NCBI RefSeq assembly: GCF_001194135.2
Contig: NC_068997.1
Location: forward strand, 50,457,484 to 50,521,149
Reading direction: 5' to 3'
Source: Octopus bimaculoides
Lineage: Eukaryota
DNA length: 63,666 nt
Shown here piece after piece: positions 6,034 to 58,284 of the stretch (positions within the stretch are counted from its first letter, which is position 1; every line of letters begins with the position of its first letter). The notes under the pieces were generated by a model that had not been told where the DNA came from, did not search any database, and worked only from the letters and a program-made list of their open reading frames with translations. Position numbers and translations under genes: made by a program.

Positions 6034-6147
6034 CTTTAGATAGATAAATGCATCGGTTCCAAAGCCTTCAACAGAGCTAAGGATCAAATCTCCATGGAAG
6101 TAACGAGCGTAGAGACGAGACAATGGTAAGCCGTAACCATAACCAGC
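6034..6147 (-). CDS. PDK: PDK coding exon 11 (114 bp)
   Basis: ttctctccaatag|GCT GGT TAT...CTA AAG|gtcagt encodes [38 protein letters not shown] (G2 box of the GHKL ATP-binding fold). Confidence 0.98.
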
Positions 6148-6408
6148 CTATTGGAGAGAAAAATGGGAAGAAAACAATGGAGATGTAGAGATGAATCATC
6201 AATATGCATTATTACACACTAGGGTGTTACACATCATACGAAATGTAACTTTGGAAGTATACTTTTGCCACCCTGGGTAATATAAAGAAATATAGCATAC
6301 ATACAATAATCATAATTCAACTTTTATCAAATTTCTTAGTGTTCATACAAAATGGTGAAATGGATGCCACTTTTCAAAAGAAAAATATTTATTACCTTAA
6401 ATAGCATG

Positions 6409-6579
6409 ATCAGGATAAATTATCCATATAATGCAGAAAAATACGTTACCGGCCAGCCATGAGACTCGAACTCACATCCCTGTGATTACATGTCAAGTGT
6501 TTTCACAGAGATGTAAGTTCGAATCTCATGGCTGGCCAGTAACGTATTTTTCTGCATTATATAGATAATTTATCCTGAT
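6409..6579. repeat. Foldback inverted repeat, 77-bp arms, 17-nt loop
   Basis: 6409-6485 versus the reverse complement of 6503-6579: 72/77 identical, no indels. Confidence 0.97.
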
Positions 6580-6786
6580 ATAGCATTATCACATGTTTGA
6601 GAAATAAATTTATTTCTGTATCTTACAATACATGTCAATGCTTCTAAAGACAAACTTCGTTTACTTTCATCGTAAAGTTGAATTTATTACCTTAAAATTA
6701 AATGAAATTAAACAAATTTCTCGTTTGTATATTTGCCCTCACAGAGAACATTCAAAGATTATGAAATATGAACTCTTGGTGGACGC

Positions 6787-7190
6787 AAGTGTGATTGTGT
6801 GGTTAAGAAGATTACTTCCCATACATGTGCTCTTGGGTTCAGTCCCACTGTGTGGTACCTTGGGCAAGTGTCTTCTGTTATAGCTCCATACCGATCAATG
6901 CATTGCATAGGGATTTGGTAAACAGAAACGAAACAAGCCCGTCATGTATGTTTGTGTGTGTACCCAAGTCTTGACATCACGTGACAATTGTAAATGAGCA
7001 TCAGCATCATACAAGTGATGTTGTGTGTTCCCATTCCTCCATAACAAACATGTCTGGCCACGGAGAACTATCACTTTGCTTTGAAACAGGTGGGGGTTGG
7101 TGACAGGAAGAGCATCCGGTCACAGAAAATCTGCCTCAACAAATTCCATCTGACCCACACAAACATGAAAAAGTGGACGTTAAAACGAAG
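6787..7190 (+). mobile_element. SINE with family A head and RTE-like tail; related pieces at about 9140-9671(-), 11992-12320(+), 13395-13590(+), 22160-22430(+), 57310-57560(+)
   Basis: Family A head followed by ...gaagggcatccggccgtagaaaatctgcc...gcatggaaaagtggacgttaaa, similar to the RTE 3' end. Confidence 0.75.
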
Positions 7191-8094
7191 TTAATCGTAG
7201 AGAAGCTGTTAGAAAAAATAAATAAATAAATAAAGAGTTGTCCACCCTTGCCTTGACTAAAGATGGTGAAGATGACGATAACAAGAAATCTGTAGATGAT
7301 TATTTAGCGTTGCTGATTCGAGTTGTTTGGCCCAAGATCAGCGTTGACAGGATAAAAGGCATTCAAGCCGTGATAGCCTATGTATTTATTTATTTTACAG
7401 GAGTTGACTACCTCAGAATGAATTACCCAATGTGTCTCTTTTTAAGACGGTAAGACGAAGTTTTATGGGAGATTTTGGATACTATTTTCAGCAGGTCAGG
7501 TGATCACTGGAGCAGGTATAGCTGTGTGGTTAAGAATCTCGCTTCCTAACCACATGGTTTCAGCTTCAGTCCCACATCGTCAAGTGTCTTGTATCATAGC
7601 TTCTGTCTAACCAAAAGGCTGCGTGTGGATTTCGTGAAACAGAAACTGAAAACAGGCCATCGTAGATGTGTGTGTGTGTATAACTCTATATCATAAAATC
7701 CACATAGTTGAGATCCGACAGACTATTAGAAAACCTCTTGAGGGCAGGTTGTTCGTGTCATGTCACTGGAACTTGGCTATGTCCATCCCTGGACGAGATA
7801 TTTTTATTACACTCAATCGTCAGATAACCAATGAAAAAGTGTGCAGTTATCTCCCTTACAAGAGTAGAGTTTAAAGTTTTGTGCGTGCATCTTTTATTTT
7901 TTACTTGTTTCAGTCATTAGACTGCGGCCATGCTGGGGCACCGCCTCGAGGAATTTTAGTCTGTTGTGGCACGGTTTTTATGGCTGGATGCGCTTCCTAA
8001 CGCCAACCACTTTACAGAGGGTGCTGGGTGCATTTTACTTGCCACCAGTATGGGTGCATTTATGCAACAGCAGCACAGGTACCATCCGAGTCTG

Positions 8095-8500
8095 ATTCTT
8101 GCCAGGGTTGCTGATTGGCTCCAGTGCCGGTGGCATGTAAAAAGCACCATTCAAGCGTGATCGTTGCCAGCATTGCCTTACTGGCACATGTGCCGGTGGC
8201 ACGTGAAAAACAACATTAGAGCATGGCCGTTGCCAGTGCCGCCGGACTGGCTCCTGTGCAGGTAGCACGTAAAAAACACCTTTTGAGCATGGTCGTTGCC
8301 AGAACTGCCTGACTGGCCCTCGTGCCGGTGGCACGTAAAACCACCCACTACACTTTTGGAGTGGTTGGCATTAGGAAGGGCATCCAGCTGTAGAAACTTT
8401 GCCAGATCAGATTGGAGCCTGGGGCAGCCTTCTGGCTCACCAGTCCTCAGTCAAACCGTCCAACCCATACCAGCATGGAAAGCGGACGTTAAATGATGAT
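8095..8500 (+). mobile_element. RTE 3'-UTR-only copy; others at about 18293-18486(+), 32650-32866(+), 10770-10985(-), 33490-33762(-), 52225-52424(-)
   Basis: Matches the 39360-39661 tail (ttggcgttaggaagggcatccagctgtagaaac...gcatggaaagcggacgttaaa(gat)n), with internal gtgccggtggcacgtaaaa subrepeats. Confidence 0.85.
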
Positions 8501-8851
8501 GATAAGAATTGTATAAAAAAATCTTATATGGACCCCACCCCCACCCAAGGGTCACATGGACACTTGTTGAGAACCACTGCTATACATAGTGATTTAATCT
8601 GTTAGAAATAGCAGCCAAATCTCCCACAAATCACACTCTATTGGTCTTAATGAAAACAGATGCATACATTGTATAATATAGTCCTAGATACTCCTAAAAA
8701 TATAAGCTGGCCCTGGCTGGAATGTCTCTGATCACAGTTCTACTTAATCAGGGATGACCTATGGCTAAACAACAAGAAATTCCTTGTCTCAAAACGAAAC
8801 AACAATAAATGTCCATGAGAACAGAGAAAGGAGGAGGAGAGGAAGACTTAC

Positions 8852-8962: not shown

Positions 8963-9835
8963 CTACAAGAAACAGAAGGAACATCTTGCATCAGTGTCAA
9001 TGATACATAATGTTTTATAACAATTCTTGTAAGAATAGCCAAAAAAAACACCGCATTAAATTGGTCATCGAATGGTTCATCAATGCAAACAGTAACAGCA
9101 CAATAATTGGTTGGTAATAAAAGACGAGAAACATACAGGAGAGAGGAATGGTCATTGTAAATGTTTTAAATGGCTGTTCTTTCCATGTTTGCATGGATCA
9201 GATGGAATTCATTGAGGCAGATTTTCTACCTCCAGATGCCTTTCCTCCTGTCACCAACCCACACCTGTTTCCAAGCAAGGTAATAATTCTCCATGGCTGG
9301 ACTAGTTTTCATGAAAGATTGCAAATGAAGGACACTGCTTGTATGACGGTGACACTTGTTTACAATCATCATGTGATGGATGGCAAGAAAAGACGCACAC
9401 TCATATATACATACATGCCTCTCTCTCTCTCTCTCTTTATATATATATATATATATATATATAGATATATATATATATACACACATACATATACATACAT
9501 ACATACTCTCTCTCACACACATACACACACACAAGCCTCTTTCAGTTTCTGTTTACCAAATCCATACATAACACTTTGGAGCCAGGGTTATAGTAGAAGA
9601 CATTTGCCCAGGTGTCACACAATGGGACTGAACCCAAGATCACATGACTGAGAGGCAAACTCCTTAACCACAGTTTTTGTAGCTACAGACTGAATAATGA
9701 TGAAGTGAATCATCAGTTTTTTTCCAAAGAATTTAAACTCTGCTTCATATATTGAATAATCTTTCTCTCAATTATAACCCCAAATATAGTGTGTATGTGT
9801 GTGTGTGTGTGTGTCTGTGTATGCATATGGATGGG

Positions 9836-9980: not shown

Positions 9981-11186
9981 CTACAAATGACAGCAAGAAT
10001 ATTCTCTTTAGCATTATATAAGTTTAATGGAAAGATTTGTCAAAGAATAACATACACACATATATACACATACTATATATCAACATAAATCGATGTATTT
10101 GATGGTATATAAGATGCACATTTAAAACATTCAAGAAATTACTTCAGGTACAAAGTTGCATAAATATTACCTGCTTTAAGGCACTAAAAACTGAGTATGC
10201 ACTACCAAAACCAGGGTATGCTCGTGCTCGGGCCCCGAAAGAGAAGGTACATGAGCACCCTGCTTGCAGCTGTCCCTGCTGGTTGCTTGCTACGAACCTA
10301 CAGCAAGGCTTCACAACATGGCCAACCTTTGCACGCTCTCTTCTATCATAGTTTGGATCATGAGAGACATTCTAAAAACTGGGGACAGTAGAATACATTT
10401 AACAGTGAATTGTCATAGCAAATGAACAGATCAAACTGTTGTCTGCTCAATAATATTGTGACTGAAAACATGAGACAGACAAATGAAATGATAATACTGT
10501 GACTCAAAGAAAAGAAACAGACAGATACAAAATACTCCATCAAACCAAAAACTACCGTCCTTTTAAGATGGTAATGTGTAGTTTGAGGGGGTATTTGGCT
10601 AATATTTCTAGCAAACCGAGTTATTATGTAGTGGCTCTCTTGTTTGTATCAATATGTTTTACTACTTTGCTGTTGCTATACGTTGGATCCAGCTATTTCA
10701 AGGCCAACACTTTTCCAGACTGATTCCATGTCTTACACCAAAATTGTCGTTGTCATTGCTACCGCCACCATCATGATCATCTTCATTTAACATGCATGTT
10801 CCATGCTGGAATCCAATGGGCCCAAGCACTGTGCTCCAGTGTTTGTTTGGCATGGTTTCTATGGTTGGATGCCCTTCCTAATGCCAACCACTTTACTTCA
10901 TGTACTGGGTGCTATTTTCATGCCTCCAGCACTAGTGAAGTTGCCAGGCAACTAGCAAGACTATAAGCCTTTAGGGAAGTGGGGACGACTTCATGCTAGG
11001 AGGATAAAGAATGGAGAATGGTAAGATATGAGAGAAATGGCCAGAGCAGAATAGGTTTCTTGTTGTAGAAGAGCTACATTGACAACTCACTTTTAGAAGA
11101 GGGGGAGATGATTTCTTAATTGATTAAGTTGATAATTACTGAAAATAAATAAATGAATAATAATAATAAAAACAGAAATGACTTAC

Positions 11187-17544: not shown

Positions 17545-17582
<38 letters not shown>

Positions 17583-17604
17583 AACACATATATGTGTATA
17601 TATA

Positions 17605-17651
<47 letters not shown>

Positions 17652-17713
17652 ACATGTATATACACATACACATGTATATACACATATATATATATACACA
17701 TATATACTTATAC

Positions 17714-17745
<32 letters not shown>

Positions 17746-17809
17746 GCATACATACATACATATACAAAAACATATATACATATACACATATTTATACATA
17801 CACACACAC

Positions 17810-17848
<39 letters not shown>

Positions 17849-17953
17849 CACATACATACATACATAACAAATGAAAGACAGAAGATGGAATAGACGAGAA
17901 TACATTATTAATCACGACAATTGTTTTGACACATCTTGCATCATTCCTCTTGG

Positions 17954-19448: not shown

Positions 19449-19847
19449 CGGCTGTGTGGTAAGTAGCTTGCTTACCAACCACATGGTCCTGGGTTCAGTC
19501 CCACTGCGTGGCACCTTGGGCAAGTGTCTTCTACTATAGCCTCGGGCCGACCAAAGCCTTGTGAGTGGATTTGGTAGACGGAAACTGAAAGAAGCCTGTT
19601 GTATATATGTATATATATATATATATGTATGTATGTGTGTTTGTGTGTCTGTGTTTGTCCTCCCCACCATCATTTGACAACCGATGCTGGTGTGTTTACG
19701 TCTCCGTAACTTAGCAGTTCGGCAAAAAGAGACCGATAGAACAAGTACTAGGCTTACAAAGAATAAGTCCTGGGGTCGATTTTCTCGACTAAAGGCGGTG
19801 CTCCAGCATGGCCGCAGTCAAATGACTGAAACAAGTAAAAGAGTAAA
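19449..19847 (+). mobile_element. tRNA-derived SINE family A, full length
   Basis: A/B-box head gctgtgtggtaag...gggttcagtccc, CORE-like gcaccttgggcaagtgtctt, internal (TA/TG)n, tail ...gactgaaacaagtaaaag. Confidence 0.9.
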
Positions 19848-20099: not shown

Positions 20100-20755
20100 C
20101 ATTGGTTCTCAACAGGGGTCAATATAGGATTTTGTTGTTAAAGTTCATGTGCAATAAATTGGCTACACTTCTGACAATACACAAAATTTTTTAACAATTT
20201 TTCGTACAATTTGTAATAATATTTAATATATACTCTTTTTACTCTTTTACTTGTTTCAGTCATTTGACTGCGGCCATGCTGAAGCACCGCCTTTAGTCAA
20301 GAAAATCGACCCCAGGACTTATTCTTTGTAAGCCTAGTACTTATTCTATTGGTCTCTTTTTGCCGAATTGCTAAGTTACGGGGACGTAAACACACCAGCA
20401 TCGGTTGTCAAGCGATGGTGAGGGGACAAACACAGACACACAAACACACATACATATATATGCTGAGCATCTTTCAGTTTCCGTCTACCAAATCCACTCA
20501 CAAGGCTTTGGTTGGCCTGAGGCTAAAGTAGAAGACACTTGCCCAAGGTGCCATGCAGTGGGACTGAACCCAGAACCATGTAGTTGGTAAGCAAGCTACT
20601 TACCACACAGCCACTTGTATTGATTAAACTACACATACACACACATATAAAAATGTAATGGGAATTTTTTAAACATTGAATAGCTATGAGGGTCCGCCCA
20701 AGTAAAATAGGAATCAAAAAGGAGACCATAGTCAAAAAATGGTTGCGAACCACTA
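20100..20755. mobile_element. hAT MITE of the 14246 family, split by a SINE insertion
   Basis: Starts cattggttctcaac and ends ggttgcgaaccacta; internal sequence matches 14246-14472 on both sides of the SINE. Confidence 0.75.
20232..20613 (-). mobile_element. SINE family A, full length, inverted relative to 19449-19847
   Basis: Reverse complement of the family A sequence over its whole length. Confidence 0.9.
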
Positions 20756-23490: not shown

Positions 23491-23947
23491 NNNNNNNNNN
23501 NNNNNNNNNNNNNNNNNNNNNNNNNNNNNNNNNNNNNNNNNNNNNNNNNNNNNNNNNNNNNNNNNNNNNNNNNNNNNNNNNNNNNNNNNNNNNNNNNNNN
23601 NNNNNNNNNNNNNNNNNNNNNNNNNNNNNNNNNNNNNNNNNNNNNNNNNNNNNNNNNNNNNNNNNNNNNNNNNNNNNNNNNNNNNNNNNNNNNNNNNNNN
23701 NNNNNNNNNNNNNNNNNNNNNNNNNNNNNNNNNNNNNNNNNNNNNNNNNNNNNNNNNNNNNNNNNNNNNNNNNNNNNNNNNNNNNNNNNNNNNNNNNNNN
23801 NNNNNNNNNNNNNNNNNNNNNNNNNNNNNNNNNNNNNNNNNNNNNNNNNNNNNNNNNNNNNNNNNNNNNNNNNNNNNNNNNNNNNNNNNNNNNNNNNNNN
23901 NNNNNNNNNNNNNNNNNNNNNNNNNNNNNNNNNNNNNNNNNNNNNNN
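23491..23947. other. Assembly gap containing the 3' part of PDK exon 4. Other gaps: 11861-11914, 15586-15822, 17998-18119, 37884-37893, 39214-39350, 41833-42254, 47247-47718, 50046-50361, 52503-52834
   Basis: Runs of N, mostly abutting (TA)n or (TG)n tracts. Confidence 0.95.
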
Positions 23948-23969
23948 CTTCACCAATCTTTCGGTAAAA
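23948..23969 (-). CDS. PDK: PDK coding exon 4, 5' 22 bp only; remainder lies in the N-gap 23491-23947
   Basis: ttttatattttccag|T TTT ACC GAA AGA TTG GTG AAG then Ns = (N)FTERLVK, matching the PDK segment FTDxLVxIRNRH; phase 2 fits exon 3. Confidence 0.85.
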
Positions 23970-26759
23970 CTGGAAAATATAAAACTACGTCGCTAAAACC
24001 AACAGTGCAGAGAACATGTCTTCGCACTTTCACCATCATATTTGCAATATATTTTTTTTTTTTACTGAAGTCATTTTTTTTGCTTCTTTTCATATAAATA
24101 TGTACATATATATATATATATATATATACAAATATATATATCATATACATAGGCATATATATACACATATATGTGTTTGTGTGTGTATGCATGTGTGTGT
24201 ATGCATGTGTGTATATATATATATATATATATACACATACATGCATATATAAATATATATATATACATATATGCGAACACATTCATATGTTTCACTTTTG
24301 AATTTGTTAAGCTTCAGAAGATACAACTCAATTCATCTAAAAATGAGATATGCGATATATATATTTGTCACTGAAAGTACTCAATACAGCATTAAAAATC
24401 AAACAGAGCCATAACAACAATGTCTGTGTGAAAGAAAATAGAACAGAGCAGAAGATTCTTTAATATATATCATACGATACAGATAAACAGATATATATAT
24501 AAAGACACATACGTATACATATATATGTGTATATATATTTATGTGTGTATACATATATGTGTGTTTTTGTTTTTGGCATTTTTTAGTAAAGAGTTTGTTT
24601 TTTTAGTATTTTTGTCATTAATTTATTTGTTTGTTTTGTGTATAAATTTATAGTAAATATATAGGTTAGTGTGTTGAAGAGCAGAGATTACAATAGATAC
24701 ATATGTTTCTTCATGTCAGAGTTTGTGTGGCTGTGTACAGGTAAATATATTGGTGAATGAAATTCAAAGTCTGATTTTCATGTTATATTTTTGTGTTTTT
24801 TACAATATTACAATACTACATATTATGAAAATACAAGTACTTTCATGCCTTCTGTAATCTTCAGGTTGGTTTATATAGTAGCAGTATTAATCAACAGTTA
24901 ATAACAATAATGAAATGACTGCATTATCATTTAAATACCTTCCAATAGACTCCAGGGGGCTGAATCCTTTGAACTATATTTCAAACAATCAGCATGCAGT
25001 TTAGACACCACAGTTTGGTGATCATGCCAACCCAATTAACATGGACAGAGTCTTATCCTTAGAATGATTTCAACCAATCAGCATGCAGCTTAGGCATCAC
25101 TGCCTGATGAAGCTTGTTAGAAGGTATTTAAAGAATAAATTCAGTTGTTTCACTACAGATGTCAATTGTGAAGCAGAACAGTCAGTGTATATATATATAA
25201 TTAATTATATGTATGCAAACATGGTTTCTTTTTACTGAAAAGAGACAAAATATACACCATTGTTTTCTTCACATAAACTATAACAAAATGAGAGAGAGAG
25301 AGAAAGAGAAAAGAAAGAAAGGAAAAGGAAAATCAAGATGAGGTGTTTCTGTATTTATGTATTTGTGAATGAACGAAGAGATGTCTGGGGGTGAGGGTGG
25401 GGGGTTTCAAAGGAATGCGAAAGATCTTCAATAGAAAAGAAACTATGATGAAAATTATGCAAAAGTGCCGTAAATCCAAAACTTTGCTTTTTCAGAAAAC
25501 GATAAAATAGTTTCACCGTTCCATAGCGAAACTGTTGTACAACACTTTGACAATTTTTTTGATATCTTGGCATCGGAAGCAGCTGAAGATACGATAGTTT
25601 AACCAAAAGAACCCGCTATTGCAAGCAAACATAAATATTGAAAAAAAATGCATTTGGGCATACAACAGTTTAACATAATAGCAATGATACACACACACAC
25701 ACAGTCTACTGTCTTATGATGAGTGGGATCAACAAAAAAATGCATTCCAGCCAGTAAAAGTTATCCTTTAAAAAGCACAATGAAATGTGAGCTATTAGAA
25801 GTTTCATGCTCTGATAGTACAATAGTCAGATAAACTTGTCAGCCAGAATGATTGCATGATTGTACATCCTGTAATTATTAAATTTTACACACACATATAC
25901 ATACATCTATGCATACACACACACACACACACACATATATTCAGACACACACATATAGATACAAATATATATGTACACACACACACATATATATATATAT
26001 ATATGTACACATATATGTATATGTCCATATATATATATGTGCATCTGTATGTATATATGGGTGTGTGTATATATACATACATATACATATATATACACAT
26101 ACATATATATACATATACATGTATGTATATATAGCTACATCCCTGGCAAGGCCTCTGCCAGGGATGTAGCCAGCCCACTTATGTGTAACATTCCTTCATT
26201 GGACACTAAACTCTGCTTGCAATTAATGAGATTGTAAATAGCAATGAAAGAGCCCTGATGTACGGGGGCCAGTCAGGGGATTCTGGTATCGGCCACGTTT
26301 GGCTGGTGCTTTTTATGTGCCACCGGCATGAGAGCCAGACAGTGGGTACTGAGATCGGCCACAATGATAATCCTGTATTTTCTTTTATCAAAACCCATGA
26401 ATTTTTCAGCACTACCGTGTGTGTGTGTGTGTTATTTTACTTATATGTTATCTTATTGCATATCTTTTAATTGCTTCACTCCTTTGACTGTAGAATTGCT
26501 GTAGCAACTGCAACAAAGTTGTAATTAGTGTAAATATCATTCAGATGTCATCTTCCTATCGAAATAATCATTTCACCAAGATGCAGGTCTGAAGAAGTGC
26601 CACTCTAATGTTTAAAACCTAAATATTCCCTTGGAATTTTTAGCATGAACTGGCATTGAAAGCAGATTTGGTACAGAAACAATTGACTGATTGTTGAAGA
26701 TGTGTTAAAGTCACTTTTTGTCTTCTTGTTTGGATTATTTTTTACAATTTCCTAAACCT

Positions 26760-37243: not shown

Positions 37244-37745
37244 AACCAAGACCTGTGGCATTATATCGTGCTTGAGAAGACCCATCAAGCCAAGCAAAAT
37301 TGCAGTCGTGGAAAATACCAGTGCCATGCTAATGGCACCCATAAGCACCCATTACATCATGTTAAGTGGTTGGCATTAGGAAGGGCATCCAGCTGTAGAG
37401 ACCATGCCAAAGCAGACACAGAATCTGACAGAAACCTCTGGCTTGCCCAACACATCTGAGACCATCTCTACTCTGTCGACATGGTTCAGAGACAAGCCAA
37501 GATATCTAGTGCCAATGTGGATCATAGGTTCAGGAATGTGAGAGTGCCAGGATTTCAAGTGTAAGCAAAAGATCCCCAAAATGTCCAATGCCATTTCCTG
37601 CATATCTGAATATCTGGTTTTTATATCAGTAGACCTTCTCCAAGAGACATGCTAGCTACCTCTCTCTCTCTCTCTCTCTCTGTCAATATATATATATATA
37701 TATATACAGAGAGAGAGAGAGAGATACACACACAAACCCACACAT

Positions 37746-51236: not shown

Positions 51237-51294
51237 CTGTCAATGGAAAAATAAAATGGAAACAAATTAGATTCTAACAATCAAAATATAATGC

Positions 51295-51356
<62 letters not shown>

Positions 51357-54300
51357 CAAGAATTGGCAACAGGTTGGTTGCAGCTCACAAATGGGTCAGT
51401 GACCTTTTCAACAAAAAGAATTAAAAAAAAATTTAATGTATTCATGAGCCATTGGATAGGTAATGGCTTCTAAATAGTCTTTTGTGACAGAATTGGTTTA
51501 ATGTATGTTTATATAAGTATTGAACAGTGATGGAAATGGGCGGTGGGGTATGCGAGGATATTTTTACATAAAGAGGTTATATAACTCTGTGTTACAAAAT
51601 TAAAATTTTTTTGTCTTTGGTCAGCAAGTGTTATTTCCTATTTGCTTCTATCTAGAAACTAAAGGAAATTACTACTAATCATTCCCTTCAAACTTTGCTT
51701 TTGCAACCTGGGTATCAATGTTTTGAAACTGGCCTGTTTTCCATTACAGATTCATCACTGAGTTGCTGAAGCAGAAATATCGTTATAGCAAATATTCTGC
51801 ACTATATCACAGACCATTAGCTTTAGTCAACCTGGGACTATAATAGAAAAATCTTGCCCAAGGTGTCATACAGTGGGACTGAACCTGAAACCATGTGGTT
51901 GGGAAGCATATTTCGGAACTACACAGCTAAGCTTGCACCTATCCCATGCCTTCATATATCACACACACATAAATACTATACATTTCCTTATCCTACATAC
52001 TAGTCAGATAAACTAAGTCAATCACCTGATTTTCCAAGATAAACACGGCTGCATATTTCATGCTTTTCTCAAGGATATCAATGCGACCAAACCACATCAA
52101 CAGCAATTAAAATCTGGGTCAAAGTGATTTCTAATGCAGTTTATTTATGATTGAAGTAAATCATGATGATACTTGAAACTTTTGTGTGGTTGCATAGCCC
52201 TTTGTCAGTGTATATATATATGTATCATCATCATCATCATCATCATCATCGTTTAACGTCCGCTTTCCATGCTAGCATGGGTTGGACGATTTGACTGAGG
52301 ACCGGTGAAACAGGATGGCAACACCAGGCTCCAGTCTGATTTGGCAGAGTTTCTACAGCTGGATGCCCTTCCTAACGCCAACCACTCAGAGAGTGTAGTG
52401 GGTGCTTTTACGTGTCACCCGCACGTTTCAGTCATTTGACTGGGGCCATGCTGGAGCACCACCTTTAGTCGAACAAATCGAACCCAGAACGTATTCTTTG
52501 TANNNNNNNNNNNNNNNNNNNNNNNNNNNNNNNNNNNNNNNNNNNNNNNNNNNNNNNNNNNNNNNNNNNNNNNNNNNNNNNNNNNNNNNNNNNNNNNNNN
52601 NNNNNNNNNNNNNNNNNNNNNNNNNNNNNNNNNNNNNNNNNNNNNNNNNNNNNNNNNNNNNNNNNNNNNNNNNNNNNNNNNNNNNNNNNNNNNNNNNNNN
52701 NNNNNNNNNNNNNNNNNNNNNNNNNNNNNNNNNNNNNNNNNNNNNNNNNNNNNNNNNNNNNNNNNNNNNNNNNNNNNNNNNNNNNNNNNNNNNNNNNNNN
52801 NNNNNNNNNNNNNNNNNNNNNNNNNNNNNNNNNNAGAGAGGCACAAGCACATACACAGACATATACACACACAGCAGTAACTTCCACCTACCAAATTCAA
52901 TCACAAGGCTTCGCTCAGCCCGGGGTTATAGCAGAAGACACTTGCCCAAGGTGCCATGCGGTGGGACTGAACCCAAAACCATGTAGCTGGGAAGCAAGCT
53001 TCCTAACCACACAGCCATGCCCGCGCCTATATATATATATATATATACGAGTTTCAAGTCAAGGATTTAATATAAGTCCAAACAGCAAGATTCATGTGGA
53101 AGCAAATACCAGCCTGAGCGATACCCAGGCTACAGTGGAGAAGGCAAGCCAATGGATTTTACTAAAAAGAGACAATGAACAATGGCTAGAAGAATATTGA
53201 GTGAAGGCTAGTAACTAGTTGATCTAGCAAGTGGGGCCTCATTTCAATGGGGTGGGGGTGGCAGTGAGCAATAATGTTGTTGAGAGGAAGGCCCTGGTGA
53301 CCCCTATAAGCTAGTTACTGTCTGGTATGCAGAGCTTTTAACTGGTAGCACTTGCATCTGCAAGTTGTTTGCAAATAATAAACATAGGCAGAAGTGTGGC
53401 TGTGAGATAAGAAGTTCGCTCCCAAACAACAAGGTTCCAAGTTCAGTCTCACTGGTTGGCGCATTAGGCAAGTGTTTTCTACTAAAGCCTCAGGCCAACC
53501 AAAGCCTTGTGGTTCGGTTTGGTAGACGGAAACTGAAAGAAGCCCATCATGTGTGTGTGTGTGTTTGTGTTTGTCCCCTCTTGACAACCAGTGTTAGTTT
53601 GTCCCTGTAACTTTAGCAATTCCGCAAAAGAGACCCTTAGAATAAGCGTAAAAAAAACAAAAAAGTATTGGGGTCCAATTCATTCAACTAAAAACTCTTC
53701 AGGGCTGTGCCCTAGTCAGTCATTCAGTCAGTCTGCATGCCTGTCTGTCTGCAGTAGACCACATATTAAAGAATCACTCACTGTTTCTTATCATTGTTAG
53801 AAATATCTGTGTACAGACATGTAATTACATTTTGCCAATAATAAACTTCCTCATAATTGTTATTTGTGCAATACTGATTTGTTATATGTTGCTATTGTTA
53901 ACGTCAATGTATGCATTGTTTGTTGTTGGGTTTTTATTTTGTTGTTTTGAGTTGTTTGAAACATGTTTGGTCACAATCTAGTTTTTTATGTATTGTGTAT
54001 GTACCCAGCTGAACAGCGACATATATAAATAGAAACTAGAAGACATTGCCATTGGAAGGCAGCAGACTTGAAATGTTAACTTAACTTTCAACAATGTTCC
54101 TTGTTTCAAAGTTGTTATTTTTATTCAGCTGCACCTTCAAAGAAACATGAAAATAGGAGTGGGGAATGCAAGATGAGGATGGATCTTCTGAAAGGTCACT
54201 TGACCCATTTCCAAGAAAAAGAATTCTTTATTTTTACAGCTTAGCAACAGAAGAAAATACATCATCATCATCATCACCATTTTTTCCATGCTTTGAATCA

Positions 54301-55482: not shown

Positions 55483-58284
55483 TATAGTCTGTTGGTTACT
55501 CAACCAATTATATAATTAAATAAACCTCCCAAAGCACCAGTTCTTTTTGAGGTTACACCCTACTGTCTTTTAATCCTTTTGTTACCATATTTCTATTGAA
55601 ATATGTTGCCCTTGCTTCAATTAACTTTGAAAATAATGGAGAAATTAGTAACTTTCACATTATTAACTCTTTTGTTGCTATATTTCTGTTGAAATATGCA
55701 GCCATTGTTTTAATTAATTTTGAAAATAATGAAAAATTGAGTCAAATAATTTTGCCATTATTACGCTGGTCTTTGGAACTTAAATTAACATATTATGATG
55801 GACGATTTTGAATTAGATCACTTCAAAACAGGAAGTTTGTTTCATAGAACCAGGAGCAGTCTCCAGAGGGTTGGCATCAAAAGGATTTGGAAGAAAATTT
55901 AACATAGAATTTTGATGGAAATTTAGATCACTTTAACCCTTTAGCAATCAGATTATACAGTCAAAAGTAATGCTTATCTCTTTATGTTGTTTCACAACCA
56001 TCTCACAACTGCGTTTGTGGACATAGTTGTTACCTGTGAACAGTTTTATAGGTGCAGGAGTGGCTATGTGGTAAGTAGCTTGCTTACCAACCACATGGTT
56101 CAGGGTTCAGCCCCACTGCATGGCACCTTGGGCAAGTGTCTTCTACTATAGCCTCGGGCCGACCAAAGCCTTGTGAGTGGATTTGGTAGACAGAAACTGA
56201 AAGAAGCTAGTTGTATATTTGTATATATATATGTGTATGTGTGTGTATATATATATATGTATGTATGTATGTGTGTGTATATGTTTGTGTGTCTGTGTTT
56301 GTCCCCCCAACATCGCTTGACAACCAATGCTGGTGTGTTTATGTTCCCGTCACTTAGCGGTTCTGCAAAAGAGACCGATAAAATAAGTACTAGGCTTACA
56401 AAGAATAAGTCCTGGGGTCGATTTGCTCGACTAAAGGCAGTGCTCCAGCATGGCCCCAGTCAAATGACTGAAACAAGTAAAAGCGTTTTAAGTAGGAACT
56501 GGTAAAAGAAGAATGAACACACAATGCACATGTGCACACTGAGGTTGGTAAAAAGAGGAGAATAAAAACACAATGCGCATGTCAAAATAAAATGGAAGAG
56601 AAGTATAAAAATGCAACATCAAACAAGTTGTTTGATGGCCTGCATTCCACGTCTGACAACACTGTCATGCAGCTTTGCCACAATTCTCTTGTTTTGAATT
56701 AATCATACATTATCCAATACCTTTGAGATTTTGATGAGGTAACTGTGAATTTTTAGAATGATAGTTTAGGATTGGTGTGAGAGGTCAGATCTGGCCAGTT
56801 TGAACATAAAACAGGTAGAGTATTTTGGTCGGACAGGGCTGGTTTAAAACAGGGGATTTGTACCATTGTACCAGGGGCAGCCGTTTCAGGCTGGTTGTTG
56901 GCAAAAGAGTTAAAACAGAATGTTAGATAATATAGACTATGGCGATGTTTGCTGGTCCTCTCTATTTTACACCGTGTCTTTGTGATTGCAGTAGCAGTGG
57001 TGCTGATGGTATTGGTGGTGGTGGTGGTGGTTGGGGGAGTAGCAGAGTGGTAGTTTTAAATACTCAAAAACAAAGCAAAGCAAAAAAAAAAACAAAAACA
57101 TGACTAGATTTCAAATCACTGTTGTTTGGCTATTGTTGTGTCTATTTACATACATAGACAAGATTTGGTGTGTAAAGATAACAAGGGAGTGGAGAAGGGC
57201 GACCTCATGACAAATTGGGTTGTCATAGAGACAGGATGACTCTGACTGATGCCCCACCCTCCACCGCTGACACCCAACTTGTTCACAAATGGAACAAATG
57301 TATAAACGCCTGTGTGTGTGTCTCCTTGTCTTCACATCACATGATAGTTGTAAATGAGTGCCACTGTCATACAAGCAGGGTTGTTCATTTCTATTATTTT
57401 GTGAAAACATGCCTGGTCACCAAGGGGGGAAATATCACCTGGTCTGGAAACAGGTGAGGGTTGGCGACAGGAAAAGCATGTGGTCGTAGAAAATTCTGCC
57501 TCAATAAACTCTGCCCCAGCTAGAGAAAGCATGGACAAATGGATGCTAAAACAATAATGATGATGCTGGTGATATACGAAAACTCAGTGTAACCCTTTAT
57601 TAGAAGAGGGTCTTTGTTATAGTGAGGTGAAGAAAAGTTAGCAAGGAGGCTGGGAATGACATTCAGAATTTGGTCCAGGAATCTGTGTCACAGATAACCT
57701 CCATTTGCCAAGCAGTTCATCCCCACCCACCGCCATCATACATAGGGCTCCCACGATACGTAGTACTCCCTCTTCTACCCCACATTACGCTGTTGTCGTT
57801 CTCCCACCCTCTTTAAAAGCCTAGTCTCTTTCTTCCACTCCCTCCTCTCTGACGCCCCTCCCCCCACTACCACATACTTATAGTTAAAACACACACACAC
57901 ATGTGAATATAATCATTAATAGCTGCTGTAATTAATTAATTAAACGAGAAAAGCAACAGGTGACACTGACAGGACCAGATTGCTGGTGGTTGTCATGGTG
58001 ATGGTGACAGTGAAGCACAAGGGTCTTGATTAACTTTGGCCTGTAGTAGTAGTAGTAGTAGTAGTAGTAGTAAAGGCAAAAAAGGAACAGCACTGTTAAT
58101 AGTAACATGGACAAGAGTTATACCCTCCCATTACCACCACCACTACTACCATCGCCACAACTATCACCAGCACCACCACAACGATGACGACGACGACGAC
58201 CACCACCACTGCACCACCGCATGGTCCTTGCAAACATTTAGGCCAAGTTTTACTGAGAATAACTTCCTTCCTGCCATCGAAGAT

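What the first reader, a model, noticed from the sequence alone, without database searches (positions are those of the whole stretch)
6409..6579. 77-bp intronic hairpin whose five mismatches are all G-U pairs in the PDK pre-mRNA
Seen: arms 6409-6485 and 6503-6579 differ at exactly five positions, and every one is C (left) opposite A (right) on the plus strand. On the transcribed minus strand each becomes G-U, so the pre-mRNA can form an uninterrupted 77-bp duplex while the antisense fold has five C-A mismatches. Only one of the five is at a CpG. The hairpin lies 261 nt upstream of exon 11, which encodes the G2 box of the ATP site. Established: ADARs need long dsRNA, nearby intronic duplexes can act as editing inducers, and coleoids recode heavily. 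Inference: either selection for a sense-strand duplex or genomically fixed A>G changes. Five same-direction transitions are suggestive (about 1 in 16 if direction is random), not conclusive.
Basis: partly seen in the sequence, partly recalled or inferred. Interest (0 to 1): 0.7.

Follow-up and report, generated by a model that had tools for sequence, protein, structure and literature searches.

The report
Young foldback transposon in octopus PDK intron
The 77-bp hairpin is real, but it is best read as a recently inserted miniature foldback transposon in an intron of an octopus pyruvate dehydrogenase kinase gene, and its one-sided G-U pattern is about as lopsided as other inverted repeats in the same gene, so nothing here shows selection or RNA editing.

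Summary
Arms 6409-6485 and 6503-6579 differ at five positions, and each is C (left) against A (right) on the plus strand. The minus-strand RNA therefore folds into an unbroken 77-bp stem (-137.3 kcal/mol), against -122.0 for the plus strand. The hairpin lies in intron 10 of a minus-strand PDK gene, 261 nt upstream of the G2-box exon. The encoded protein is identical to Octopus vulgaris/sinensis PDK, so the host is a coleoid.

The 171-bp palindrome is flanked by a 7/8-matching direct repeat, ATAGCATG and ATAGCATT (chance about 0.002). It has no coding capacity and carries a B-box-like motif in each arm. This is the anatomy of a MITE-like foldback insertion.

The polarity is weak evidence. Nineteen other inverted-repeat pairs in the gene give 155 sense against 143 antisense G-U mismatches, and they are over-dispersed. 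With that spread, 5 of 5 has a two-sided probability of about 0.10. One pair shows 0:5 the other way.

The Argonauta orthologous intron is 741 nt and has no long hairpin. Internal clues favour C>T decay of one arm over A>G changes.

The element is probably a generic ADAR substrate. No special function is indicated.

The parts
6401..6408 (.). Left copy of the putative target-site duplication, ATAGCATG
   Evidence: It abuts the palindrome directly and matches 6580-6587 at 7 of 8 positions. The empirical chance of a match of at least 7/8 at this spacing in this window is 0.002.
6409..6485 (.). Left arm of the foldback. It is the 3' arm of the sense (minus-strand) RNA and carries the five G of the G-U pairs (plus-strand C at 6425, 6450, 6465, 6473, 6479).
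6486..6502 (.). 17-nt central spacer or loop (TTACATGTCAAGTGTTT), with a 3-bp mini-stem in the fold
6503..6579 (.). Right arm of the foldback. It is the 5' arm of the sense RNA and carries the five U (plus-strand A at 6509, 6515, 6523, 6538, 6563).
6580..6587 (.). Right copy of the putative target-site duplication, ATAGCATT
6460..6471 (-). B-box / T-arm-like motif GTTCGAGTCTCA in the left arm. The stem GTGAG/CTCAT is complementary in this arm's version.
   Evidence: 3 matches in the window against 0.44 expected; two of them are the two arms. It is not recognised as a tRNA by ARAGORN or by Rfam.
6517..6528 (+). The same motif in the right arm, GTTCGAATCTCA. Here the stem is GTAAG/CTCAT, with an A-C mismatch.
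6148..8851 (-). PDK intron 10, which hosts the element
   Evidence: It is bounded by exon 10 (8962-8852, donor GTAAGT) and exon 11 (acceptor ...CCAATAG).
6034..6147 (-). PDK exon 11, encoding [38 protein letters not shown] (G2 box of the GHKL ATP site)
   Evidence: It is 100% identical to Octopus PDK P0121.

Best explanation
The feature is a 171-bp, non-coding, almost fully palindromic MITE-like foldback transposon. It has two 77-82-nt terminal inverted repeats around a 7-17-nt spacer. It inserted into intron 10 of an Octopus PDK gene and duplicated an 8-bp target, ATAGCAT(G/T). Its two arms have since drifted apart by five transitions, or they inherited some of those differences from the source copy. 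Because all five put C in one arm against T in the other, the sense pre-mRNA sees G-U wobbles and the antisense strand sees C-A mismatches. I read that polarity as a neutral outcome, most simply C>T decay on the sense strand of the right arm, and not as a product of selection. When the gene is transcribed the element should fold on its own into a 77-bp duplex. Like other young inverted repeats in animal introns, it is then expected to be a promiscuous ADAR (hyper-editing) substrate. The anatomy, location, target duplication, fold energies and background polarity are shown here. Transposon origin, age, direction of the changes and ADAR binding are inferred.
For: The palindrome and the five C/A mismatches are. 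The 7/8 direct repeat directly abuts both ends and has a chance of 0.002. The only ORF inside the element is 45 aa and has no relative among 5.8 billion proteins. The element folds autonomously within 751 nt of pre-mRNA context. There is no general sense-strand G-U bias in 19 other non-overlapping inverted-repeat pairs of the same transcription unit (155 against 143, p = 0.52). Those pairs are over-dispersed (chi2 = 38, df 18, p = 0.004), which gives P(5/5) of about 0.05 one-sided and 0.10 two-sided. Pair 10839/37344 shows 0:5 in the opposite direction and pair 52425/56397 shows 4:0. The Argonauta hians orthologous intron is 741 nt, has no inverted repeat longer than 18 nt, and has no alignable intron sequence, so this is not an old conserved structure. 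Arm divergence of 5/77 = 6.5% is about 3% per arm. On the calibration quoted in PMC13282606 (JC 0.09 for about 25 My) that is roughly 9 My, within the period of TIR-element activity reported for Octopus. Three clues favour ancestral C: the single CpG site is CCGG in the left arm against CCAG in the right; the split of 1 outer to 4 inner changes fits the distribution of C (P = 0.35) better than that of T (P = 0.12); and the T-arm-like stem is complementary only in the left-arm version. Young repeats forming dsRNA are the main ADAR targets across metazoans, including O. bimaculoides (PMC9989829).
Against: No second copy of the element was found: none in the 63.7-kb window and none in the metagenome, prokaryote-genome or viral collections. 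Those collections do not hold octopus genomes, so membership of a multi-copy family is unproven. The termini (ATCAGG...) do not match a transposon superfamily consensus that I can name. All five mismatches belong to the same one of four possible transition classes. That has probability of about 0.004 under a symmetric independent-site model, which is more lopsided than pure chance predicts comfortably and hints at some directional process or a shared history.
Confidence: 0.72

Rival explanations
1. A strand-biased mutational process caused the pattern. Transcription-associated cytosine deamination on the non-template (sense) strand, or deamination of one arm while it was single-stranded, produced five C>T changes on the sense strand. 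The polarity is then mutational but not random.
For: All five changes can be written as C>T on the minus strand of the right arm. That strand of that arm holds 19 of the 32 sense-strand cytosines, so P(all five there | sense C>T only) is about 0.07-0.11. The same-class probability of about 0.004 under a symmetric model favours some directional process. The sense strand of the window is T-rich relative to A (19576 against 17996).
Against: Other inverted repeats in the same transcription unit show no net sense bias (155:143). The sense strand has C>G (12068 against 11466), the opposite of what sustained sense-strand C>T loss predicts. Only one of the five sites is a CpG.
Confidence: 0.12
2. Selection keeps the sense-strand duplex intact because the dsRNA is functional, for example as an editing inducer element that recruits ADAR to the G2-box exon, or as a hairpin-RNA or small-RNA precursor. 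Only wobble-preserving changes were tolerated.
For: The sense RNA has an unbroken 77-bp stem and is about 15 kcal/mol more stable than the antisense fold. The hairpin is 261 nt from an exon, and editing inducer elements work at such distances, upstream or downstream (PMC5654063, PMC3479170). [quoted passage not shown]
Against: The polarity is not significant once background scatter and multiple inverted repeats are considered. Selection for pairing predicts G-U in either arm orientation and also predicts compensatory double changes. Instead all five are U in the 5' arm and G in the 3' arm, with no compensatory pair. The element looks like a recent insertion with a target duplication and is absent from Argonauta, whereas described inducer elements are conserved. 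No exon 11 / complementary-sequence duplex appears in the predicted fold. No paper in the searched library links PDK to cephalopod editing.
Confidence: 0.06
3. The five G on the sense strand are fixed footprints of ADAR. Either a hyper-edited hairpin RNA of the element was reverse-transcribed and inserted, so that inosine was read as G, or edited A sites were later replaced by genomic G.
For: Strand-coordinated, clustered transitions of one class are the signature of hyper-editing (PMC4365171, listed). Editing an A-U pair gives exactly a G-U-like pair on the transcript strand. Each arm carries a Pol III B-box-like motif.
Against: The element has no 3' tail and is palindromic to its very ends with a short fixed-length target duplication, which fits cut-and-paste insertion better than retroposition. 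It is not recognised as tRNA-like by ARAGORN or Rfam. The position distribution and the CpG site favour ancestral C, meaning C>T and not A>G. One of the five sites would have a 5' G neighbour, which is disfavoured by ADAR (own knowledge of ADAR neighbour preference; contexts). There is no obvious selective reason to hard-wire edits in an intron.
Confidence: 0.03
4. The feature is not a mobile element. It is a local inverted duplication, arising from template switching or foldback repair, that happens to be flanked by a short repeat.
For: No other copy was found in the window or elsewhere. A 15-nt exact direct repeat, ATTTATTACCTTAAA, at 6387 and 6682 hints at local rearrangement.
Against: The 7/8 direct repeat sits exactly at both palindrome ends (P about 0.002). 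The searched collections lack octopus genomes, so the missing copies are uninformative.
Confidence: 0.05

Closest known systems
Palindromic MITEs such as human Made1 (source of the hsa-mir-548 family; PMC1784062)
   Same: Both are short, non-coding, almost fully palindromic elements made of two terminal inverted repeats around a few central bases. Both are flanked by a target duplication, are often intronic, and fold into a near-perfect hairpin when read through by the host transcript.
   Different: Made1 is 80 bp with a TA duplication (mariner type). This element is 171 bp with a 7-8-bp duplication, which in my own knowledge is the length typical of hAT, P or Merlin-type elements. No family, copy number or small-RNA product is known for it. 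Rfam miRNA hits are all far below their gathering scores.
Editing inducer elements (Gabra-3 149-nt intronic hairpin; GluA2 45-bp intronic stem; PMC3479170, PMC5654063)
   Same: Each is a long intronic stem within a few hundred nucleotides of a coding exon, and such stems can act upstream or downstream of the exon.
   Different: The described elements are evolutionarily conserved and sit next to a shorter exon/complementary-sequence duplex that holds a known edited site. Here there is no known edited site, no predicted exon duplex and no conservation in Argonauta.
Inverted young repeats as promiscuous ADAR substrates (inverted Alu pairs in primates; young repeats across metazoans, PMC9989829)
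   Same: All involve intramolecular dsRNA formed by low-divergence repeat arms inside a pre-mRNA. This is the class most heavily edited in animals, including O. bimaculoides.
   Different: This is a single self-complementary element rather than two separate insertions. Editing was not measured here.
tRNA-derived SINEs of octopus (OR1/OR2/OK families; own recollection, not checked here)
   Same: Each arm carries a B-box / T-arm-like motif, GTTCGA(G/A)TCTCA followed by GGCTGGCC.
   Different: There is no A box, no tRNA fold, no 3' tail and a palindromic layout. At most, a fragment of a tRNA-related sequence was captured.

Membership tests
MITE / foldback DNA transposon | Terminal inverted repeats reaching the element ends | tested here: met
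   Arms of 77-82 nt are 91-94% complementary from the first to the last base of the element.
MITE / foldback DNA transposon | Target-site duplication directly flanking the repeats | tested here: met
   ATAGCATG and ATAGCATT match at 7 of 8 positions, with empirical P = 0.002.
MITE / foldback DNA transposon | Small size and no coding capacity | tested here: met
   The element is 171 bp. Its only internal ORF is 45 aa and has no homologue.
MITE / foldback DNA transposon | Multiple dispersed copies with different flanks | not testable with these tools
   The window holds one copy. No octopus genome can be searched by DNA here, and scans of the metagenome, prokaryote and viral collections found nothing real.
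MITE / foldback DNA transposon | Empty site in a related genome | not testable with these tools
   The O. vulgaris orthologous gene spans 135 kb, so no DNA was returned. Argonauta introns are not alignable.
Editing inducer element | Long, stable intronic stem near a coding exon | tested here: met
   The stem is 77 bp at -137.3 kcal/mol and lies 261 nt upstream of exon 11.
Editing inducer element | Adjacent shorter duplex (exon plus complementary sequence) holding a site-selectively edited adenosine | tested here: inconclusive
   The 751-nt fold shows only short local pairings over exon 11 and no extended exon-intron duplex. No editing data are available, and no PDK editing is reported in the searched papers.
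Editing inducer element | Evolutionary conservation of the stem | tested here: not met
   The Argonauta hians orthologous intron is 741 nt and its longest inverted repeat is 18 nt. The element also bears the marks of a recent insertion.
Editing inducer element | Deletion lowers editing at the nearby site | not testable with these tools
   This needs a minigene or genome-editing experiment.
tRNA-derived SINE | tRNA-related head with A and B boxes or a tRNA-like fold | tested here: not met
   Only a B-box-like 12-mer is present. ARAGORN finds no tRNA, and Rfam gives no tRNA hit at E up to 10.
tRNA-derived SINE | 3' tail (poly-A or simple repeat) and variable-length target duplication | tested here: not met
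   The element ends in the inverted repeat itself, with no tail.
microRNA precursor | Match to a curated family, or a pre-miRNA-sized imperfect stem | tested here: not met
   The best Rfam hits score 57.7 bits (MIR537) against a gathering score of 100, and 37.2 (mir-249) against 70. These hits reflect hairpin shape only, and the stem is much longer and more perfect than a typical precursor.

The most novel reading that the evidence does not exclude
The strand-coordinated, single-class mismatches are not neutral. Either the sense-strand duplex is maintained because the transposon-derived hairpin has been co-opted as an ADAR-recruiting element for the PDK ATP-site exon, or the five G are inherited footprints of ADAR hyper-editing of the element's own RNA. 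That would be a record of RNA editing written back into a cephalopod genome.
Probability: 0.05. Interest if true: 0.65.

Novelty: new member of a known kind. Interest (0 to 1): 0.2.

Why it matters
If the ordinary reading is right, this is one more young foldback repeat in an octopus intron. Its value is as a worked example. G-U against C-A asymmetry in a single hairpin is weak evidence for strand-specific selection unless it is calibrated against other inverted repeats in the same transcript, and here those repeats scatter widely in both directions. If the polarity did track host-gene strand across the whole family, that would be a cheap genome-only signal of selection on intronic dsRNA, or of editing-linked mutation, in the animal group with the heaviest recoding. 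The family-wide test is therefore worth running on the Octopus assemblies.

Tried and rejected
1. Other copies in the window: blastn with word size 7 found only the element itself.

2. Family copies in public DNA. Two metagenome scans gave nothing, or two chance hits in high-GC bacterial-looking contigs. One prokaryote-genome scan and one viral scan gave nothing. None of these collections holds octopus genomes.

3. Copies through translated ORFs. The 45-aa ORF inside the element has no exact record and no homologue. Exact look-ups of the exon 10 read-through ORF and of the 83-aa ORF next to the hairpin found nothing.

4. Orthologous locus. The O. vulgaris gene is on record, but its range of 135 kb is too long for DNA to be returned. 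The Argonauta locus was fetched, but its introns do not align. The weak blast hit inside its intron 10 has E = 0.4-0.56 and is chance.

5. tRNA or SINE identity was rejected. miRNA identity was rejected because all hits are below threshold.

6. General transcription-linked bias was rejected as a strong effect for this gene (155:143).

7. The first protein search, with three exons only, returned only short and distant fragments. A longer query was needed to identify the host as Octopus.

8. A literature search linking PDK with cephalopod editing found no paper.

Full report
**1. Observation**

The inverted repeat is real. The repeat finder reports arms 6409-6490 / 6498-6579 (82 nt, 91% complementary).

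- 6425/6563
- 6450/6538
- 6465/6523
- 6473/6515
- 6479/6509

Each is C in the left arm against A in the right arm on the plus strand. Only 6450 lies in a CpG. Two T/T mismatches next to the loop end the stem.

Folded as RNA, the minus strand gives an uninterrupted 77-bp helix at -137.3 kcal/mol. The plus strand gives the same helix broken by five 1x1 loops, at -122.0 kcal/mol. Both are about 22-23 sd beyond shuffled controls, as any palindrome would be.

**2. Gene context and host**

Translating the minus strand downstream of the hairpin gives [38 protein letters not shown]. This is the G2 box region of a pyruvate dehydrogenase kinase.

- tblastn with a PDK sequence, and later with Octopus PDK P0121, places the exons on the minus strand at 51237, 30969, 23986, 13878, 12966, 12448, about 11264, 9980, 8962-8852, 6147-6034 and 4463-4338. 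All have canonical AG acceptors and GT donors.
- The first 49 residues are encoded outside the window. The G2-box exon is therefore coding exon 11 of 12 if those residues form one exon.
- The whole window upstream of about 4338 lies inside this minus-strand transcription unit.
- The hairpin lies in intron 10 (6148-8851), with 261 nt between it and exon 11.
- The encoded protein is identical over all aligned exon residues to PDK of Octopus vulgaris / O. sinensis. It is 83% identical to Argonauta hians and 78% to Acanthosepion pharaonis in gapped alignments that include the residues I left out.

**3. What the element is**

The palindrome is flanked directly by ATAGCATG (6401-6408) and ATAGCATT (6580-6587). 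A match of at least 7/8 at this spacing occurs in 0.2% of random placements in this window. The element is 171 bp and consists almost wholly of its two inverted repeats. Its only internal ORF is 45 aa and has no relative in the protein collection.

This is the anatomy of a miniature inverted-repeat (foldback) transposon with a 7-8-bp target-site duplication. From my own knowledge, that duplication length is typical of hAT, P or Merlin-type elements. The termini do not let me assign a superfamily.

Each arm carries a B-box / T-arm-like motif, GTTCGA(G/A)TCTCA. ARAGORN finds no tRNA. Rfam gives only sub-threshold matches to unrelated miRNA hairpin families. The tRNA resemblance is therefore a lead and not an identification.

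The arms differ by 5/77 = 6.5%. With the Octopus calibration quoted in PMC13282606 (JC 0.09 for about 25 My), this suggests an insertion roughly 9 My ago if the arms were identical at insertion. That falls in a period when TIR elements were active in Octopus.

**4. Is the polarity more than chance?**

Any C>T or A>G change on a strand turns a Watson-Crick pair into G-U on that strand and into C-A on the other.

I calibrated this inside the same transcription unit. Nineteen non-overlapping inverted-repeat pairs give 155 sense-G-U against 143 antisense-G-U mismatches (p = 0.52), so there is no general sense bias.

The pairs are over-dispersed (chi2 = 38, df 18, p = 0.004). Examples are 21:6, 24:13 and 5:15. 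One pair is 0:5 with polarity opposite to the target (10839/37344), and another is 4:0.

A symmetric beta-binomial fitted to this background gives P(5 of 5 sense) = 0.05, or 0.10 two-sided. The naive binomial gives 1/32 and 1/16. With a score of inverted repeats in the window to choose from, the strand polarity alone is unremarkable.

All five mismatches belong to the same one of the four possible transition classes: U always in the 5' arm of the sense RNA and G always in the 3' arm. Under a symmetric independent-site model this has a probability of about 0.004. Selection for pairing does not predict it, because G-U in either orientation would serve equally well. It is what one expects if one arm took all the hits of one mutational class, or if the difference was inherited as a block from the source copy.

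**5. Direction of the changes**

No outgroup was available, so only internal clues can be used. They agree with each other but are weak.

- The single CpG site reads CCGG in the left arm and CCAG in the right arm, which is the usual direction of CpG decay.
- One change lies in the AT-rich outer 41 nt and four lie in the GC-rich inner 36 nt. This fits the distribution of C (6:13, P = 0.35) better than that of T (12:10 after reversion, P = 0.12).
- The T-arm-like stem GTGAG/CTCAT is complementary in the left-arm version but carries an A-C mismatch in the right-arm version.

All three favour ancestral C:G pairs with C>T on the sense strand of the right arm. They do not favour A>G in the left arm, and so lean against the 'genomically fixed editing' reading.

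**6. Function**

In 751 nt of pre-mRNA context the hairpin folds on its own. Exon 11 shows only short local pairings and no extended duplex with an intronic complementary sequence.

Editing inducer elements, as defined experimentally, are conserved long intronic stems next to a shorter duplex that holds the edited site (PMC3479170, PMC5654063). Here the long stem is present. The second duplex is not evident. Conservation fails at the octopod level: the Argonauta hians orthologous intron is 741 nt, its longest inverted repeat is 18 nt, and only the exons align. No paper in the searched library connects PDK with cephalopod editing.

What can be said from established knowledge is generic. Young, low-divergence repeats that form intramolecular dsRNA are the primary ADAR targets across metazoans, O. 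bimaculoides included (PMC9989829). This 77-bp duplex is therefore very likely to be hyper-edited when the intron is transcribed in ADAR-rich tissue. That does not distinguish it from the many other inverted repeats in this gene.

**7. What could not be done**

It needs a DNA search of Octopus assemblies, and none is available here.

- Pattern scans of the metagenome, prokaryote and viral collections found nothing real.
- ORF-based look-ups failed.
- The O. vulgaris orthologue is on record, but the gene is too long (135 kb) for its DNA to be returned.

**8. Verdict**

The most likely explanation is an ordinary one: a young palindromic MITE-like insertion in an intron, with neutral and probably C>T-driven divergence of its arms, which happens to leave the sense-strand duplex intact. 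The selection and editing-footprint readings remain possible at a few per cent each and can be tested cheaply on existing Octopus genomes and RNA-seq.

Noticed in passing
window 7057-7171 and 9180-9297: An inverted-repeat pair (118 nt, 82% identity) brackets PDK exon 10 (8962-8852). Its transition mismatches are 12 sense-G-U against 2 antisense-G-U. The predicted duplex is -181.9 kcal/mol on the sense strand against -148.1 on the antisense strand. Exon-flanking inverted repeats are the usual geometry for back-splicing or exon skipping.
   Followed up: partly
window 6387-6401 and 6682-6696: An exact 15-nt direct repeat, ATTTATTACCTTAAA, is present only twice in the window and encloses the foldback plus about 100 nt of downstream sequence. 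It could be the target duplication of an older insertion into which the foldback later landed, or it could be chance.
   Followed up: partly
window 10839-10913 / 37344-37419 and 52425-52502 / 56397-56474: Other inverted-repeat pairs in the same gene have fully one-sided transition polarity: 0:5 antisense and 4:0 sense. Across 19 pairs the polarity is over-dispersed (chi2 = 38, df 18, p = 0.004), which suggests that arm age and composition effects commonly skew such counts.
   Followed up: yes
window 19450-19847 / 20238-20612: A large foldback in intron 4 has arms of about 400 nt at about 90% identity, separated by about 390 nt. Its polarity is balanced (7 sense to 9 antisense). It is a stronger dsRNA former than the reported hairpin.
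   Followed up: partly
window 6796-6961: This is a copy of an abundant repeat with at least 15 hits in both orientations across the window (for example 19453, 20444, 53013, 54713, 55082, 56067). It starts about 220 nt from the foldback and is probably one of the octopus SINE families.
   Followed up: no
window 23948-23986 and N run 23491-23947: PDK exon 4 (...[13 protein letters not shown]) abuts an assembly gap, so part of that exon is missing from the window. The window contains ten N runs totalling 2560 bases.
   Followed up: no
window 17545-17864: A roughly 320-bp stretch is self-complementary in many registers with almost only C-A type mismatches, which looks like a microsatellite. I excluded it from the polarity statistics.
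   Followed up: no
L003 65284-66024 (Argonauta hians): The orthologous intron 10 is only 741 nt against 2704 nt in the window. The Octopus intron has been expanded about 3.6-fold, apparently by repeats.
   Followed up: partly
window 6600-6617: There is a perfect 18-nt palindrome, GAAATAAATTTATTTC-type, 21 nt beyond the right end of the foldback.
   Followed up: no
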